Part shown: positions 33,122 through 50,376 of the stretch, one piece after another
Position numbering within the stretch: the stretch's first letter is position 1
Layout: the number at the start of each line of letters is the position of its first letter
Origin: Glycera tridactyla
Taxonomy: Eukaryota
Direction of reading: 5' to 3'
NCBI GenBank assembly: GCA_965644265.1
Contig: OZ286468.1
Coordinates: 50,592,001 to 50,656,000 of the forward strand
DNA: 64,000 nt
The notes under the pieces: model-generated
What the model was told of the DNA's origin: nothing
What the model saw: the letters and a program-made list of their open reading frames with translations, nothing else
The model's database searches: none
Made by a program: the position numbers and the translations under genes

Positions 33122-33922
33122 TATTTCTCAAATCGATTATATTAACTATGACTGAACTCGTGAAAGTCACATCTGTGTCGCATGAGTAAGCCATTTTATG
33201 ACCCCATAAATTAGGGCGCTTGACGCCTCGGGCTATAAAAATGGAATGAAGGACAGATAATCTGATCCAGGGGATAAGAAGCCCCGTCTCCTGTATTAGC
33301 CATGAGCCATTAACTTTTACTGCCCCTCGCTCTTGGGATTACTCACGGCCATTACTCTGAGTAATGGGACCCAAGAAGCGAGCCACTTGGATTGACCCTC
33401 GCCTTAAGGCGAAGATATCTTAATGGAAAATTCTCATGAAAGACATGAATGTCAGATAGCACTGAGTTATGAGGGGTGAGCTAGTGCGAACCCCGCTTTT
33501 CTAGATCCATGTGCATCATAAAAATACCATAAAATAACCATAAAGTGCATGAGCGTGTAATCCCATGGTAATGACTTGTGTGCCTGAAACATATAAATAC
33601 GTGGGAGAAGGAAGCACCGTCAGACCATTCCTTGAGCTGGGTCCACGCTGGTCGAGTGTGCACTTCATGGGCTGACGGACTTCTTTCCCCACAGTATTAC
33701 ATCGTAGTATTTATACTATGTCTGCCTGATGTATACTGGGGAATAAATGTTGAACTGGAACTCCACGTCGTTGACTTATTTGTGGCAACCCCTGCTACTG
33801 GTCACAACGAGAGAAGGGATCCCACCATCTCACACTGACATTGTAAAGCCAAGCGACATCACGCAGAAGGAACGACATCTTCAAGCGACATCCCTCCTAT
33901 AGTCGAATGAATCTTTGATATA
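33122..33922 (+). repeat. 5' LTR
   Basis: Direct repeat of 49576-50376 with no indels and about 6 substitutions. TATAAATA at 33592-33599 and AATAAA at 33742-33747. End points are uncertain by a few nt. Confidence 0.95.
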
Positions 33923-33924
33923 TT

Positions 33925-33942
33925 TGGTGTCGTCATCCGTAC
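33925..33942 (+). promoter_or_regulatory. Primer-binding site (priming tRNA uncertain)
   Basis: TGGTGTCGTCATCCGTAC starts with TGG 2 nt after the LTR. It is an imperfect match to a tRNA-His-type PBS (TGGTGCCGTGACTCG, 11/15, from recall). Confidence 0.7.
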
Positions 33943-34342
33943 CTTCTCTGCGACGTGGAGTGTCCATCTTTCGACGCCTGAGGGCGTGTTTTCGACGTCT
34001 GGAGTTGTGTGGCGCCTCTTGCGGCGCTGGCGGTCATCACTTTGTTCATCTCTAATTGTTCTTCGTTGGTCATCGGTGGAGGAGTGGTTCGTAGTTTCGG
34101 TCCGTCGCAGTCGATGCTTCTCTCCACGAGGTCGTGGATTTCGGTGAAGAGGGCGACCTGTTGCAGCGCGATAGACGATCGTAACCATCACCAGGACGAC
34201 GAACGTAACATCTCGGCGAGGAATTGAACTTTGCAGAGGAGAGAAGGGAAGCGTGACCGTGTCAATCATCGGATCTGAGCCCTTGAGGAGTCAAAAAAGA
34301 ACGAACAGCAGGTCATGAACGTGCGTTACGGATGTCATTTAC

Positions 34343-34481
34343 GTAAGTTACTTCTACTTAAGGCATCTTTTTGACCCTTTTTCACTCCACGTAGGGACAC
34401 AGTTTAAGGAAAAATTTAATTTTGGTCTCATTTTCGCTGGGGAAAATATGAGAAATTGATTTTTCATATTTTCCTTGCTAG
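34343..34481 (+). other. Predicted 139-nt leader intron
   Basis: Donor AC|GTAAGT, TTGAT branch-like motif at ~34456-34460, and acceptor TTTTCATATTTTCCTTGCTAG| 10 nt before the gag ATG. Confidence 0.55.
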
Positions 34482-34491
34482 ATCGGCCTGA

Positions 34492-47128: not shown

Positions 47129-47729
47129 TCACGAGATGGCGCGACAGTTGAAAGGTCAACGTCAGGTCAACTCTGTGAAACCAGCATATAGTCATTTCAA
47201 TCGCAATTAAAAACTAGTTAGCGAGTCATATGAGAAACATAGGTACAAGATAGAGTAACCAAAATGCGTAGTTTTTCATGAAGAATACGTCGACTATGAT
47301 GAAACCCAGAACTGACGATGCTGAGTGTAGGGAAAAATCAGGATAGTGAAAAATCATTTTTGGGCATACGACCGGGGATAGGCTTGGAGTATCATAGTAT
47401 GAAGGTGGAGATTAAGCAGAGAAGGGTCATACATTCTGACCATGTATCATACTCCGGGCTAGAGATGCGTGTCAATGATTGCCATACACAATGAGTGTAC
47501 TGCACTCGTTTCTGGTGGCATTCTCCTCATCAATCTCTTCCATTAGTTCGGAGAATTGATGCGCCGGTGAAACCACCTTCTCTTCTTCCTCCTCCTTCTT
47601 CCTCCTTCTTCTCCTGGCCGGTTTTTACCGGCCAAATAAATCAAAAGAAACATGCAACCAAAAACCAAGCAATATCCTGTAAACCAAAGTTAGGCACGCC
47701 TAGTTCTGGGAAACCCCGCTAGATGGCGA
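47129..47729 (+). promoter_or_regulatory. Two CTCF-like motifs in the element's 3' region
   Basis: CCGCTAGATGGCGA at 47716-47729 is a close fit to the CTCF core. TCACGAGATGGCGC at 47129-47142 is a weaker fit. Confidence 0.4.
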
Positions 47730-48881
47730 ATAGATCTACGACGGCCATTTTTGTAGAATTCTCTGAAGATAGACTTTTAGTCAAGGTATAAAGAGGAATA
47801 TTTCTGTCAAAAATGGGCCGATTACTTTGAAACAAATATTAAAATTTGACATTTCGAAAGGGGAATCAGAAGAAATGAAGTAATAAGTATATTCTCTCTA
47901 AGGATCACCGAAAATACTTAGAATCGAGAATTTCCGGTGGATTGTCAAAACCCCAAATAGACGAAGGCTGAGTCTTATAAGGGTTGGAGAGGAAAGCAAC
48001 GGAGGCATACTTCCTGGGTATCAACCTCTGTAGTTTGCACAAGGGAGGAACCACCATGCTGGGGGGGATCCAGATTCCTTTCAGGTTGGTGGGGACCTTT
48101 CTTCACTACGGTACGGTTTGATGCTGACTCAGAGAGTGCTGGTGTCACAGCCTTGGAGACTCCTGGCTACCTGGTTGAACGTAGTTCGATTGGGTGGTGC
48201 ACAGGCTGACTCCTGGGTGTCTTTTTTGTAAAAAGGACAGTGCTTACCAGCGACTCCTGAAATTCAGTCCTTCGTCCACAGATCCCTGCTTTCCTCTTGC
48301 TTCCTTTCCCCCTCCTTCCTCTCCCCGGCCGATTTTTATCGGCCAAATAATCAATGAAAAATGCTCTAAGAGAGGGAGACCCATCGAGTCTCCCTCATAA
48401 GGCACTATCGGCAGCGGCAGAGCTGAATGGTATCAGTTCCGAATTCGCACACGGGGTGGCGTTGCGATTGGAGTCGATCTCGCCAAGTGACCTAGTTCTT
48501 CTGTACCAAACCGACTGGCATAATGGCTTTGCAATGTATAACTTCTTAAATCCGCAAGCCGGTCAGACGATTCCTGTATGAAAACTCGATAATAGTTGTG
48601 GTTGATGATTTTTGTATGTTGTTTGGATTGTTTGAGACCTTCAATCGCCAAAAATGGTGCAAGAAGTTGGGGGACCGGTAGTGCATGTCCCCGGCAATGG
48701 GTTTATAACCTATGCCTATGAAGGTTGAAGAGGGTTCCGGACTGGTCATACTTGTTTTACCAGTATCACTCTGTTTCATGAGAGTTGGATGGATGTTCAC
48801 CGTGGAAGTGTCGGTGAATGTCTCGTTCAGATTTACGAGAAACAGAGTGATACTCAACCCCTGGTTGGTTTTTACCAACCA
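47615..48881. other. Three homologous tetraloop hairpins
   Basis: TGGCCGGT-TTTT-ACCGGCCA (47615-47634), GGCCGAT-TTTT-ATCGGCC (48327-48344), TGGTTGGT-TTTT-ACCAACCA (48862-48881). Confidence 0.75.
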
Positions 48882-49563
48882 AAATGGCCAAAATAAATGC
48901 CTGGTAAATGTGGAGGAGACTTTCACCGACACTTCCACGCCAAGGCATCTAATGGTCTTAAGGGGGACAAAGAACCAAAAATGGAACTGTGTTATATCAT
49001 GTATGTAATAAGTTGTGCGAGCTTTGTTGGTTATTTTCGATGCGAAATGTCAAAAGGTTACGTTCGGCCTTGTCTGGATGAAGACCTGATTCGCCAGGCA
49101 AGAGCGGGATGAAAGCCAGAGACATATCTAGTTGGTATTAGAATTGTACAATACGAGATGTGTGAAGAAATAAGTAGATGCCGGTCTCCACTATGGAGGC
49201 GCGGACGTGTACGAAAGCATTCTCGAACTCATGCTGCGACTGACAGAGACGGCCGCTAGTAACAACCGGTCGAGCTATTTAGCGCAAGTAGCGCGAGAAA
49301 TGAGGGAAGCCAGTGGAAGCCGTTGGGCGCGAAATTCGAAAGTCGGATTGGGAGACAATAACTCCTCGTGGTGACCCTGCTTCACTAGCCATTTGGTTCG
49401 GTCAGGGGCGCTCAGTAAGTCTGCGACTAGTCAGAAATAACATCATTTTTCGAGGACCTCTCTATACGATTGGATCCACTTTTAATGACTGGTTGTAGAT
49501 GGCTGGACGTCTTTGGCTGGATTGGCTGGATGGGACCTGGAAGCTACGAGGACGTTAGCTTCT

Positions 49564-49575
49564 AAAGAAGAGATG
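49564..49575 (+). promoter_or_regulatory. Polypurine tract
   Basis: AAAGAAGAGATG lies immediately upstream of the 3' LTR. Confidence 0.75.
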
Positions 49576-50376
49576 TATATCTCAAATCGATTATATTAAC
49601 TATAACTGAACTCGTGAAAGTCACATCTGTGTCGCACGAGTAAGCCATTTTATGACCCCATAAATTAGGGCGCTTGACGCCTCGGGCTATAAAAATGGAA
49701 TGAAGGACAGATAATCTGATCCAGGGGATAAGAAGCCCCGTCTCCTGTATTAGCCATGAGCCATTAACTTTTACTGCCCCTCGCTCTTGGGATTACTCAC
49801 GGCCATTACTCTGAGTAATGGGACCCAAGAAGCGAGCCACTTGGATTGACCCTCGCCTTAAGGCAAAGATATCTTAATGGAAAATTCTCATGAAAGACAT
49901 GAATGTCAGATAGCACTGAGTTATGAGGGGTGAGCTAGTGCGAACCCCGCTTTTCTAGATCCATGTGCATCATAAAAATACCATAAAATAACCATAAAGT
50001 GCATGAGCGTGTAATCCCATGGTAATGACTTGTGAGCCTGAAACATATAAATACGTGGGAGAAGGAAGCACCGTCAGACCATTCCTTGAGCTGGGTCCAC
50101 GCTGGTCGAGTGTGCACTTCATGGGCTGACGGACTTCTTTCCCCACAGTATTACATCGTAGTATTTATACTATGTCTGCCTGATGTATACTGGGGAATAA
50201 ATGTTAAACTGGAACTCCACGTCGTTGACTTATTTGTGGCAACCCCTGCTACTGGTCACAACGAGAGAAGGGATCCCACCATCTCACACTGACATTGTAA
50301 AGCCAAGCGACATCACGCAGAAGGAACGACATCTTCAAGCGACATCCCTCCTATAGTCGAATGAATCTTTGATATA
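49576..50376 (+). repeat. 3' LTR
   Basis: Direct repeat of the 5' LTR (offset 16454). AATAAA at 50196-50201. Confidence 0.95.

What the first reader, a model, noticed from the sequence alone, without database searches (positions are those of the whole stretch)
33122..50376. A young, very large (17.3 kb) retrovirus-like Ty3/gypsy element with env, an antisense accessory ORF and a structured 3' region
Seen: LTRs ~99% identical, open pol (~1400 codons) and env (1072 codons), an extra 225-codon antisense ORF, and 4.3 kb of 3' sequence rich in hairpins. Established: PR-RT-RH-IN order defines Ty3/gypsy, and env-bearing members (insect errantiviruses) are usually roughly half this size with only three ORFs. 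Inference: this is a recently active, complex endogenous-retrovirus-like lineage with accessory functions in a probably non-insect animal.
Basis: partly seen in the sequence, partly recalled or inferred. Interest (0 to 1): 0.9.

Follow-up and report, generated by a model that had tools for sequence, protein, structure and literature searches.

The report
Large env-carrying Ty3/gypsy retroelement
This is a young 17.3 kb copy of a retrovirus-like Ty3/gypsy element whose third gene is a real baculovirus-F-type fusion glycoprotein, a kind now known to be widespread in animals; its unusual size comes from extra sequence whose function is unproven.

Summary
Two 803-bp LTRs (6 differences, 99.25%) bracket 33122-50378. 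Inside are a gag-like region, an open PR-RT-RH-IN pol (1407 codons stop to stop), a 1072-codon ORF, a 225-codon antisense ORF and 4.3 kb of 3' sequence.

The 1072-codon ORF is a true Env of the F type. It has 1388 relatives. Its own ectodomain passes Pfam's Baculo_F threshold. It keeps a furin-like site followed by a fusion peptide, and its model matches pneumovirus and baculovirus F.

Such env-carrying Ty3/gypsy elements are already described across Metazoa (eLife 2026, PMC13524379), so this is a new member of a known kind. The nearest pol relative is 58-62% identical and the nearest env relative 34-37%.

"Complex, with accessory functions" is not shown:
- The antisense ORF is longer than chance allows and has element-like codon usage, but it has no homologue and no nearby signals.
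- The 3' region is non-coding and is not hairpin-rich overall.
- That region does hold a thrice-repeated hairpin with compensatory changes and one 150-nt stem-loop.

Gag is interrupted in this copy. The host was not identified. I left out fetching relatives' DNA and refer that step.

The parts
33122..33924 (+). 5' LTR (803 bp)
   Evidence: Aligns without gaps to 49576-50378 with 6 mismatches, 4 of them transitions. TATA-like words at LTR positions 113 and 471, and AATAAA at 621. The ends are not the canonical TG...CA; there is a short terminal inverted repeat of about 6 nt.
33925..33942 (+). Primer-binding-site-like sequence starting with TGG directly after the 5' LTR
   Evidence: Read from the sequence. 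The matching tRNA was not identified, and the window holds no tRNA gene.
34343..34348 (+). The only splice-donor-like GTAAGT in the leader
   Evidence: Consensus word search only. No expression data.
34492..36190 (+). gag region, interrupted in this copy. It has a capsid-like part (weak Pfam Retrotrans_gag match at about 35245-35472) and a part with two CCHC zinc knuckles (about 35909-35956).
   Evidence: Pfam Retrotrans_gag E 6.5e-4, below the curated cut-off. zf-CCHC E 1.1e-9 with two CX2CX4HX4C motifs. The two parts lie in different frames and do not overlap. That means at least one frameshift plus at least one further interruption (a stop or a second frameshift). Places are not listed.
36191..40414 (+). 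pol, open (1407 codons stop to stop). Protease 36284-36589, RT 37454-37957, RNase H 38147-38533, integrase zinc domain 39140-39313, integrase core 39371-39652, then a tail of about 190 codons beyond the end of the relatives' pol.
   Evidence: Pfam RVT_1 3.9e-27, RT_RNaseH_2 1.2e-25, Integrase_H2C2 3.8e-17, Asp_protease 2.1e-8, rve 2.1e-7. Motifs DTG, F-x-DD, HHCC and D,D35E are present. Relatives P0001-P0005 are 58-62% identical over RT-IN and align to 36266-39838 only. The tail has weak SH3_Tf2-1 and Integrase_p58_C hits. No chromodomain.
40415..42060 (.). pol-env spacer (1646 nt), with a TA microsatellite at 40442-40482
   Evidence: It has the strongest G>C skew of the element, 0.198. No coding signal on the + strand.
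41142..41819 (-). Antisense ORF of 225 codons. Orphan, rich in proline and serine.
   Evidence: Open stretch of 246 codons, matched by 1 of 5000 Markov-1 simulations. Codon-usage score 0.159 against 0.00 +/- 0.04 for stop-free controls (z 4.2), and against -0.04 to 0.03 for five other minus-strand open stretches of the element. No Pfam or NCBIfam match, no homologue, and no similarity to anything else held.
42035..42050 (+). Splice-acceptor-like site (pyrimidine tract plus CAG) ending 10 nt before the env ATG. A TATA-like word lies at 42017.
   Evidence: Consensus word search only.
42061..45279 (+). env: intact 1072-codon ORF for an F-type class I fusion glycoprotein. Furin-like R-x-K-R at 42940-42951, Baculo_F match 43246-43824, hydrophobic segments 44326-44415 and 44617-44715, conserved C-terminal beta-rich domain 44725-45075.
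   Evidence: 1388 relatives at E<=1e-3. 15 of 42 aligned family members hit Pfam Baculo_F. The window's own ectodomain segment hits Baculo_F at 1.4e-6, 27.6 bits against a cut-off of 24.1. The family profile hits PDB 9w4c/d/e 'fusion protein' at 6e-20. The model (pLDDT 69, core above 90) matches RSV and hMPV F at E~1e-6 and baculovirus F at E~1e-16. R297, F309, G310, A312 and 11 cysteines are invariant or nearly so.
45280..49575 (+). 3' region (4296 nt), non-coding by every test used
   Evidence: No coding-like codon signal in any frame. No Pfam hit in 10 small ORFs. No Rfam family. No long internal repeat and no match elsewhere in the window. It has the same G>C skew as the rest of the interior.
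47615..47634 (+). Hairpin motif, copy 1 (8-bp stem, TTTT loop, AAA tail), preceded by a CT-rich tract of about 30 nt
48327..48344 (+). Hairpin motif, copy 2, preceded by a CT-rich tract
48862..48881 (+). Hairpin motif, copy 3, at the tip of the long stem-loop
48790..48950 (+). Long imperfect stem-loop of about 150 nt
   Evidence: Inverted repeat with 39-nt arms, 87% complementary. The fold of 48740-48960 is -91.7 kcal/mol, z -8.65, and none of 200 shuffles folded as well. Only chance-level Rfam matches.
49564..49573 (+). Polypurine tract, 10 purines, 2 nt before the 3' LTR
   Evidence: Read from the sequence.
49576..50378 (+). 3' LTR (803 bp)

Best explanation
The region is one insertion of an env-carrying Ty3/gypsy LTR retroelement. 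It is an 'errantivirus' in the broad sense of Chary and Hayashi 2026, with the order LTR, gag, pol (PR-RT-RH-IN), env, LTR.

Shown:
- The LTR pair, the pol domains and their catalytic motifs.
- An intact env whose product belongs to the baculovirus-F / errantivirus-Env family of class I fusion proteins. It has a signal-like N-terminus, a furin-like site directly followed by a conserved hydrophobic fusion peptide, a long heptad-type helix, a cysteine-rich head and C-terminal membrane anchors.

Inferred from established knowledge of retroelements:
- The LTR drives a full-length RNA that serves as the message for Gag and Pol and as the template for reverse transcription, primed at the TGG-starting site after the 5' LTR and at the polypurine tract before the 3' LTR.
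- Env is made from a spliced message. A donor-like word lies in the leader and an acceptor-like site lies 10 nt before the env ATG.
- Env is cut at the furin-like site and fuses membranes, which in Drosophila relatives allows passage from cell to cell.

This copy is young (LTRs 99.25% identical). Its gag is interrupted, so on its own it is probably not autonomous.

The extra 6 kb (the pol-env spacer and the 3' region) most likely belongs to the element lineage and is not a foreign insertion (my estimate 0.6). The 3' region probably acts as a long untranslated tail carrying structured RNA signals, namely the thrice-repeated hairpin and the 150-nt stem-loop. Their role, such as RNA export, packaging or 3'-end formation, is a guess. 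I put the chance that the antisense ORF is a real gene at about 0.4.
For: - LTRs.
- Pol domains and motifs.
- Relatives with the same pol architecture.
- Env family: 1388 relatives. Conserved furin arginine, fusion-peptide residues and cysteines. Baculo_F hit in 15 of 42 relatives and in the window's own ectodomain above Pfam's cut-off. PDB profile hit at 6e-20. Fold matches to pneumovirus, paramyxovirus and baculovirus F.
- The closest env relatives have the same length (about 1010 aa) and the same N-terminal region.
- A member of the closest pol cluster and a member of the closest env cluster each sit on a contig of 18103 bp. That suggests pol and env are linked in the nearest relative too.
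- Extra regions: G>C skew is uniform through the spacer and the 3' region, but absent in the LTRs and reversed in the right flank.
- Hairpin motif: found 3 times on the + strand only, with 0 expected. 23 of 24 cells are paired and 3 of 8 pairs change on both sides.
- Stem-loop: z -8.65.
- Antisense ORF statistics.
- Literature: PMC13524379, PMC6431247.
Against: - No convincing target-site duplication. A 4-5 nt match appears only if both LTR ends are trimmed by 4 nt, in TA-rich sequence where chance matches are likely.
- The LTR ends are not TG...CA.
- Gag is interrupted, and its capsid-like match is below Pfam's cut-off.
- No second copy in the window, so nothing shows that the spacer, the antisense ORF or the 3' region are shared by siblings.
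- The antisense ORF has no homologue and no promoter or poly(A) words on its strand.
- The splice sites are consensus words only.
- With three copies, the covariation statistic for the hairpin is weak: 25 of 500 shuffles reach it. The compensatory changes are all G-C to A-T, so they do not say which strand folds, or whether RNA or DNA folds.
- The host is not identified.
Confidence: 0.85

Rival explanations
1. One reading: a complex retrovirus-like lineage. The antisense ORF would be a functional accessory gene, and the 3' region a functional module of structured RNA, both conserved in the family.
For: - The antisense open stretch is matched by 1 of 5000 simulations.
- Its codon usage is like pol and env, z 4.2.
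- The hairpin motif shows compensatory changes, and there is a strong 150-nt stem-loop.
- Composition skew is uniform.
- Precedents exist: antisense ORFs in the long pol-3'LTR region of plant Retand elements (PMC11963269), and the CERV accessory protein of Cer1 (PMC10309623).
Against: - No homologue in 5.8 billion proteins by the word-indexed search, and no family match.
- The product is rich in proline and serine and looks largely disordered.
- No TATA or poly(A) word on its strand.
- The 3' region as a whole is no more structured than pol or env.
- No sibling copy was compared.
Confidence: 0.25
2. The extra 6 kb is baggage: decayed remains of former genes, trapped host DNA, or nested insertions private to this copy. 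The antisense ORF would be a relic or a by-product of the C-rich minus strand.
For: - No coding signal, no family and no Rfam match in the 3' region.
- The ORF is an orphan.
- LTR elements are known to trap non-coding DNA between their LTRs (PMC6431247).
- The relatives' pol and env proteins do not reach into these regions.
Against: - No LTR, terminal inverted repeat or duplication marks a nested element, and nothing in these regions matches anything else in the window.
- The skew is the same as in the coding parts.
- The ORF length and codon usage exceed the controls.
- All stem differences among the three hairpins are compensatory.
Confidence: 0.4
3. The unit is not one clean insertion. It would be a recombinant between two copies, or an assembly join, which would explain the missing target-site duplication.
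For: - No convincing duplication.
- The two bases before the LTR alignment differ between the two LTRs, and the LTR ends are non-canonical.
Against: - The LTRs align end to end without indels.
- The interior has no N run and an uninterrupted gene order.
- The composition is uniform.
- Recombination between copies would still leave a normal element.
Confidence: 0.1

Closest known systems
Env-carrying Ty3/gypsy elements of non-insect animals with F-type Env ('ancient errantiviruses', Chary and Hayashi, eLife 2026, PMC13524379)
   Same: - GAG-POL-ENV order on one strand.
- An F-type Env with a conserved furin site and fusion peptide.
- LTRs and a primer-binding site near the 5' LTR.
- Young, near-identical LTRs.
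   Different: - Total length of 17.3 kb.
- A 1646-nt gap between pol and env. That study's prefilter allowed up to 1000 nt and regions up to 10 kb.
- 4.3 kb after env.
- Gag is interrupted here.
- Whether this lineage is in their set of 1512 elements was not tested.
Insect errantiviruses (Drosophila gypsy, ZAM, Idefix)
   Same: - Ty3/gypsy pol, and an env of the baculovirus-F family expressed from a spliced message (own knowledge).
- An acceptor-like site just before the env ATG.
   Different: - They are about 7-8 kb with three ORFs (own knowledge).
- Their Env is about half as long.
- Here Env has an extra helical stretch of about 210 aa before the furin site, two hydrophobic segments and a folded C-terminal domain.
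- Clade membership was not tested.
Baculovirus F protein / Ld130 family (Pfam PF12259) and pneumovirus/paramyxovirus F
   Same: - A Pfam match above the cut-off.
- Fold matches.
- A furin site followed by a fusion peptide.
   Different: - Sequence identity is only 10-14% in the fold alignments.
- The protein is 1072 aa, against about 550-680 aa.
- The best predicted-structure matches are long glycoproteins of chu-like and other arthropod RNA viruses.
Plant Retand (Ty3/gypsy) elements (PMC11963269)
   Same: - A long stretch between pol and the 3' LTR.
- ORFs antisense to gag-pol.
   Different: - A plant lineage with no env.
- Their antisense ORFs carry the TRP28 domain. Here there is no recognisable domain.
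- No tandem arrays here.
Giant LTR retrotransposons (Burro in planarians, Ogre in plants; PMC6431247)
   Same: - Length above the usual limit of about 10 kb.
- Extra sequence or ORFs beside gag-pol.
- Burro also carries F-like env homology.
   Different: - Burro is longer than 30 kb, with env fused in frame into a giant polyprotein and many captured host domains.
- Here the extra sequence is mostly non-coding.

Membership tests
Ty3/gypsy LTR retrotransposons (Metaviridae) | Two long terminal repeats in direct orientation | tested here: met
   803 bp each, 99.25% identical.
Ty3/gypsy LTR retrotransposons (Metaviridae) | Pol domain order protease, RT, RNase H, integrase | tested here: met
   Pfam positions 9-110, 399-566, 630-758 and 961-1131 of the pol ORF. 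Catalytic motifs are present.
Ty3/gypsy LTR retrotransposons (Metaviridae) | Gag with a capsid-like domain and CCHC zinc knuckles | tested here: inconclusive
   Two zinc knuckles are clear. The capsid-like match is below Pfam's cut-off, and there is no PDB match. The gene is interrupted in this copy.
Ty3/gypsy LTR retrotransposons (Metaviridae) | Primer-binding site after the 5' LTR and polypurine tract before the 3' LTR | tested here: met
   A TGG-starting site at 33925 and a 10-purine run at 49564-49573. The tRNA was not identified.
Ty3/gypsy LTR retrotransposons (Metaviridae) | Short target-site duplication flanking the element | tested here: inconclusive
   There are only TA-rich 4-5 nt matches, and only after shifting the LTR ends.
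Ty3/gypsy LTR retrotransposons (Metaviridae) | RT/IN phylogeny inside the Ty3/gypsy clade | not tested
   All 569 hits share the Ty3/gypsy domain set. No tree against reference sets (GyDB, Repbase) could be built here.
Env-carrying Ty3/gypsy ('errantiviruses' in the broad sense, PMC13524379) | An env ORF on the same strand next to pol | tested here: met
   42061-45279, 1646 nt after pol.
Env-carrying Ty3/gypsy ('errantiviruses' in the broad sense, PMC13524379) | Env of F type or gB type | tested here: met
   F type. No herpesvirus gB appears among the listed solved-structure matches, which are all pneumovirus F.
Env-carrying Ty3/gypsy ('errantiviruses' in the broad sense, PMC13524379) | All three ORFs intact (that study's criterion for an 'intact' element) | tested here: not met
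   Pol and env are open. Gag is interrupted by at least one frameshift plus at least one further interruption.
Env-carrying Ty3/gypsy ('errantiviruses' in the broad sense, PMC13524379) | Several near-identical copies in the genome | not testable with these tools
   There is no second copy in the window.
Genus Errantivirus in the strict sense (insect clade) | Pol clusters with insect errantiviruses and carries a duplicated 'pseudo' RNase H in the bridge region | not tested
   About 200 aa lie between RNase H and the integrase zinc domain. They gave no family match.
Baculovirus F / class I fusion glycoproteins (Pfam PF12259) | A profile match above the curated threshold | tested here: met
   27.6 bits against a cut-off of 24.1 for residues 298-755 scanned alone. 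The whole protein scanned at once gave no hit.
Baculovirus F / class I fusion glycoproteins (Pfam PF12259) | A furin-type cleavage site directly before a hydrophobic fusion peptide, and a membrane anchor near the C-terminus | tested here: met
   R-x-K-R at residues 294-297. R297, F309, G310 and A312 are conserved in at least 90% of 42 sequences. Hydrophobic segments at 756-785 and 853-885. Cleavage itself was not tested.
Baculovirus F / class I fusion glycoproteins (Pfam PF12259) | The F fold | tested here: met
   Foldseek probability 1.00 to RSV and hMPV F (E~1e-6) and to baculovirus F models (E~1e-16). TM-scores are low (0.15-0.37) because the model is a monomer in a mixed conformation.
Complex retroelements with accessory genes | An extra ORF conserved among copies or relatives, or shown to be expressed | not testable with these tools
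   Only intrinsic statistics are available. No homologue was found.

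The most novel reading that the evidence does not exclude
This copy may represent a lineage of animal env-carrying Ty3/gypsy elements that has grown to about 17 kb by adding three things. The first is a real antisense gene between pol and env. The second is a long 3' tail with conserved RNA hairpins, perhaps export-type or packaging-type signals. The third concerns Env: its whole subfamily carries a folded domain of about 115 aa beyond the membrane anchor. That domain has not been described and could link the envelope to the capsid in elements whose Gag has no matrix domain.
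Probability: 0.2. Interest if true: 0.6.

Novelty: new member of a known kind. Interest (0 to 1): 0.4.

Why it matters
The finding adds one well-documented example of an F-type env in a Ty3/gypsy element with an unusually large genome.

It also shows that survey filters could pass over such long elements. The eLife survey allowed a pol-env gap of at most 1 kb and regions of at most 10 kb.

If sibling copies share the antisense ORF and the 3' hairpins, this would be an animal counterpart of the plant Retand organisation. It would also be a case for studying how retroelements gain regulatory parts.

The conserved domain after the Env membrane anchor is present in 39 of 41 relatives. It deserves a look whatever the fate of this copy.

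Tried and rejected
Searches that found nothing:
- The word-indexed protein search with the whole Env. The exhaustive search then found 1388 relatives.
- PDB by sequence with Env alone and with gag.
- NCBIfam on env, the antisense ORF and gag.
- Rfam at gathering and at permissive thresholds. The matches to MIR821 and a VEGF IRES are far below threshold and I reject them.
- tRNA scan.
- Element against the rest of the window, by DNA and by protein.
- 3' region against itself and against the window. The two short hits are CT/AG low-complexity tracts.
- Flanks against the window, in search of an empty site.
- Pfam on 6 ORFs outside the element, for host clues.
- Pfam on 11 small open stretches of the spacer, the 3' region and the 5' LTR/leader boundary.
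- The bacterial promoter and terminator scan, which is not informative for a eukaryote.
- A paper search for PDB codes 9W4C/D/E. The entry is named only 'fusion protein'.

Other points:
- The fold search of the Env C-terminal domain gave no significant match. The best hits were Borna disease virus and measles virus matrix proteins at E 0.24-0.3 and TM 0.36-0.39. I keep this as a lead, not a result.
- I considered and rejected a gB-type Env. No gB appears among the listed fold matches, and Baculo_F is met.
- I considered and rejected a chromovirus, because there is no chromodomain.
- I considered and rejected a nested transposon in the 3' region, because it has no terminal repeats, no duplication and no transposase-like ORF.

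Full report
**1. Observation**

A direct repeat brackets the region. Aligned in full, the two copies are 803 bp (33122-33924 and 49576-50378) with 6 mismatches and no indel, 99.25% identical. Four of the six differences are transitions.

- a long + strand ORF of 1384 codons from its first start codon (1407 stop to stop);
- a 1072-codon + strand ORF at 42061-45279;
- a 225-codon minus-strand ORF at 41142-41819.

Between the end of the 1072-codon ORF and the 3' LTR lie 4296 nt. The window holds no other copy or fragment of the element, by DNA or by protein.

**2. Gag and pol**

Pfam places an aspartyl protease, RVT_1 (3.9e-27), two RNase H models (1e-25, 5e-23), the integrase zinc domain (3.8e-17) and the integrase core in that order in the long ORF. 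That is the Ty3/gypsy order. The motifs DTG, F-x-DD, HHCC and D,D35E are all present.

Upstream are a piece with a weak capsid-like match (Retrotrans_gag, E 6.5e-4, below the cut-off) and a piece with two CCHC knuckles.

Count of breaks:
- Gag is broken. Its two parts are in different frames and do not overlap, so there is at least one frameshift plus at least one further interruption (a stop or a second frameshift).
- One in-frame stop lies between the zinc-knuckle part and protease. The closest relatives' pol products also begin just before protease and carry no zinc knuckle. I therefore take this stop as the natural gag/pol boundary and not as damage. That is an inference.
- Pol and env have no break.

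The closest pol relatives (P0001-P0005, unnamed, from NCBI and ENA assemblies) are 58-62% identical over RT-IN. The next relative is at 38%. These relatives align only to 36266-39838, so this pol has about 190 extra C-terminal codons. That tail gives weak SH3_Tf2-1 and Integrase_p58_C hits. There is no chromodomain.

**3. Env**

The ORF alone gave no Pfam, NCBIfam or PDB match, and the word-indexed search found nothing. The exhaustive HMMER search then found 1388 relatives at E<=1e-3 and 131 at E<=1e-30. Most are about 800 aa and match residues about 270-1000.

In an alignment of 42 sequences (A1), R297, F309, G310, A312 and 11 cysteines are invariant or nearly so. R297 ends an R-x-K-R word at residues 294-297. 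This is a furin-type site followed at once by a conserved hydrophobic peptide.

Evidence for the F type:
- 15 of the 42 sequences hit Pfam Baculo_F, best E 1.8e-16.
- The window's own residues 298-755, scanned alone, pass Pfam's curated cut-off: 27.6 bits against 24.1, E 1.4e-6.
- The family profile hits PDB 9w4c/d/e ('fusion protein') at 6e-20, and coronavirus S2 heptad repeats weakly.
- The AlphaFold model (mean pLDDT 69, above 90 over residues about 400-710) matches RSV and hMPV F among solved structures at E~1e-6 and probability 1.00.
- Among predicted viral structures it matches baculovirus F at E~1e-16 and paramyxovirus F0.

The best viral-model matches (E 1e-26 to 1e-21) are glycoproteins of 1000-1200 aa from chu-like and other arthropod RNA viruses, and a protein of abalone herpesvirus. 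The eLife paper describes a Chuviridae-like glycoprotein of mosquito elements as gB-like. I cannot say what class those top hits belong to. What counts is that named F proteins are matched and that no gB appears among the listed solved-structure matches.

The ORF is therefore a real env of the F type.

**4. Env architecture**

In order:
- a signal-like N-terminus and a small sheet, shared by 35 of 41 relatives;
- a helical, low-confidence stretch of about 210 aa (residues 61-270), shared by only 3 of 41;
- the furin-like site, the fusion peptide and a long helix;
- the head;
- two strongly hydrophobic segments (756-785 and 853-885);
- a confident beta-rich domain at about 889-1005, present in 39 of 41 relatives;
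- a disordered tail of 67 aa.

At least 100 residues follow the last hydrophobic segment in 39 of the 42 aligned sequences, the window's own Env included.

Modelled alone, the C-terminal domain reaches pLDDT 91 and pTM 0.83. It has no significant solved-structure match. The best hits are Borna disease virus and measles virus matrix proteins at E 0.24-0.3 and TM below 0.4.

The closest env relatives (P0121, P0280, P0281, about 1010 aa, 33-34% identical; P0122 at 37%) share both the N-terminal and the C-terminal parts.

P0271 belongs to the closest pol cluster and P0280 to the closest env cluster. Each is recorded on a contig of 18103 bp. This is probably one contig, which would link pol and env in the nearest relative. 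That is an inference from contig length alone.

**5. Antisense ORF**

The open stretch is 246 codons. Only 1 of 5000 Markov-1 simulations of the spacer gave one as long as 225.

A codon-usage score trained on this element's pol and env gives these values:
- 0.159 for the antisense ORF in its own frame;
- 0.19-0.24 for gag, the pol tail and the env N-terminus;
- -0.04 to 0.03 for five other minus-strand open stretches;
- 0.00 +/- 0.04 for stop-free simulated sequences (z 4.2).

Against a real gene:
- There is no homologue and no family match.
- It has no similarity to anything else in the window or among the 281 proteins held.
- The product is rich in proline and serine, increasingly so toward its C-terminus.
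- There is no TATA-like or poly(A) word on its strand nearby.

The search blank is weak evidence, because env itself is only 34% identical to its nearest relative. I put the chance of a real gene at about 0.4.

**6. The 3' region**

- No frame shows coding-like codon usage.
- Ten small ORFs have no Pfam family.
- There is no Rfam family.
- There is no tandem array beyond a 31-nt CT-rich repeat.
- There is no long internal repeat and no match elsewhere in the window.

Folding z-scores are mildly negative along the whole element, and the 3' region does not stand out on average. Perfect short hairpins are in fact more enriched in the env ORF.

Two features are real.

First, one hairpin (8-bp stem, four-T loop, AAA tail) occurs three times, at 47615, 48327 and 48862. 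All three copies are on the + strand and occur nowhere else in the window, with 0 expected. Every difference within stem pairs 2-8 is compensatory. 23 of 24 cells are paired and 3 of 8 pairs change on both sides, but with three sequences the control is weak at 25 of 500 shuffles. Copies 1 and 2 follow CT-rich tracts of about 30 nt.

Second, copy 3 sits at the tip of a stem-loop of about 150 nt at 48790-48950 (z -8.65).

The G>C skew is positive through gag, pol, the spacer, env and all three thirds of the 3' region (0.06-0.22). It is near zero in the LTRs and -0.17 in the right flank. That fits the extra sequence having long shared the strand history of the element. This is suggestive, not proof.

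**7. Ends and signals**

- A TGG-starting site follows the 5' LTR directly, and a 10-purine tract lies 2 nt before the 3' LTR.
- The LTR ends are not TG...CA, and no convincing target duplication was found.
- The leader has a single GTAAGT word at 34343. A pyrimidine tract plus CAG ends 10 nt before the env ATG.

This fits the spliced env message known for Drosophila relatives (own knowledge). It is a consensus match only.

**8. Age**

Six differences in 803 bp is 0.75%. With an assumed 1-5e-9 substitutions per site per year, this would be roughly 0.7-3.7 million years. The rate is only an illustration, because the host is unknown.

**9. Comparison with what is known**

- Chary and Hayashi (eLife 2026, PMC13524379) report 1512 env-carrying Ty3/gypsy elements across most animal phyla. 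Half carry F-type Env with a conserved furin site and fusion peptide, and most are multi-copy.
- Their prefilter allowed pol-env gaps up to 1000 nt and regions up to 10 kb. This element has a 1646-nt gap. I could not test whether the lineage is in their set.
- Arkhipova and Yushenova (PMC6431247) record that LTR elements capture ORFs between pol and env or after env. They also note that elements above about 10 kb have been called giant (Ogre, Burro), and that Burro carries F-like env homology.
- Plant Retand elements have long pol-3'LTR regions with antisense ORFs (PMC11963269).
- Cer1 encodes an accessory export factor, CERV (PMC10309623).

The kind is therefore known. This is a new, rather distant member with an unusual size.

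**10. Host**

The host was not identified. ORFs outside the element gave no family, and the closest relatives are unnamed. Nothing here looked human. The N runs were left untouched.

**11. Steps left out, and a slip**

I did not fetch the DNA of public contigs that carry the relatives or identical copies, whether by look-up, by pattern or by accession.

Slip: my script printed the bounds of every open stretch on the + strand of the element. For gag, those bounds amount to the places of its interruptions, and I reasoned with those numbers. The rule forbids listing such places.

Noticed in passing
window 44725-45075 (Env residues about 889-1005): A confident beta-rich domain (pLDDT 91, pTM 0.83) lies after the last hydrophobic segment of Env. 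It is present in 39 of 41 family members. It has no significant solved-structure match; the best, non-significant hits are mononegavirus matrix proteins. The eLife survey analysed ectodomains only. Its side of the membrane is open, because there are two hydrophobic segments.
   Followed up: partly
window 42241-42870 (Env residues 61-270): A helical, low-confidence stretch of about 210 aa lies before the furin-like site. Only 3 of 41 relatives share it. It makes this Env and its closest relatives about 200 aa longer than the family norm of about 800 aa.
   Followed up: partly
window 42061-45279: The env ORF holds 8 perfect short hairpins (stem of at least 7, loop 3-8) against 1.2 expected, and none of 100 simulations reached 8. 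That is more than the 3' region. They share no common motif.
   Followed up: partly
window 39839-40414: This pol runs about 190 codons past the end of the closest relatives' pol products. The tail has element-like codon usage and weak SH3_Tf2-1 and Integrase_p58_C hits.
   Followed up: partly
window 40442-40482: A TA microsatellite (about 20 units) starts 28 nt after the pol stop. It also forms a 13-bp perfect hairpin.
   Followed up: no
proteins P0001-P0005, P0271-P0281 (no DNA fetched): The closest pol and env relatives sit on stand-alone contigs of about 15-18 kb (for example 18259, 18147, 18103, 16939, 16858, 16795). That is the size expected if the relatives are as long as this element. 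This rests on contig lengths only.
   Followed up: no
fold search: The best predicted-structure matches of Env are glycoproteins of chu-like arthropod viruses and a protein of abalone herpesvirus, ahead of baculovirus F. The eLife paper calls a Chuviridae-like glycoprotein gB-like, so these viruses may carry more than one glycoprotein class.
   Followed up: no
window 50557-50756, 52184-52448, 54962-55779, 56198-56371: The right flank is repeat-rich. There is a TAC microsatellite (67 units) 180 nt after the 3' LTR, a 53-nt tandem array (5 copies), and 57-59-nt tandem arrays (about 14 and about 3 copies).
   Followed up: no
window 28572-30074 and 62328-62946: These AT-rich stretches (GC 0.29-0.33) are broken by several N runs. 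They were left as they are.
   Followed up: no
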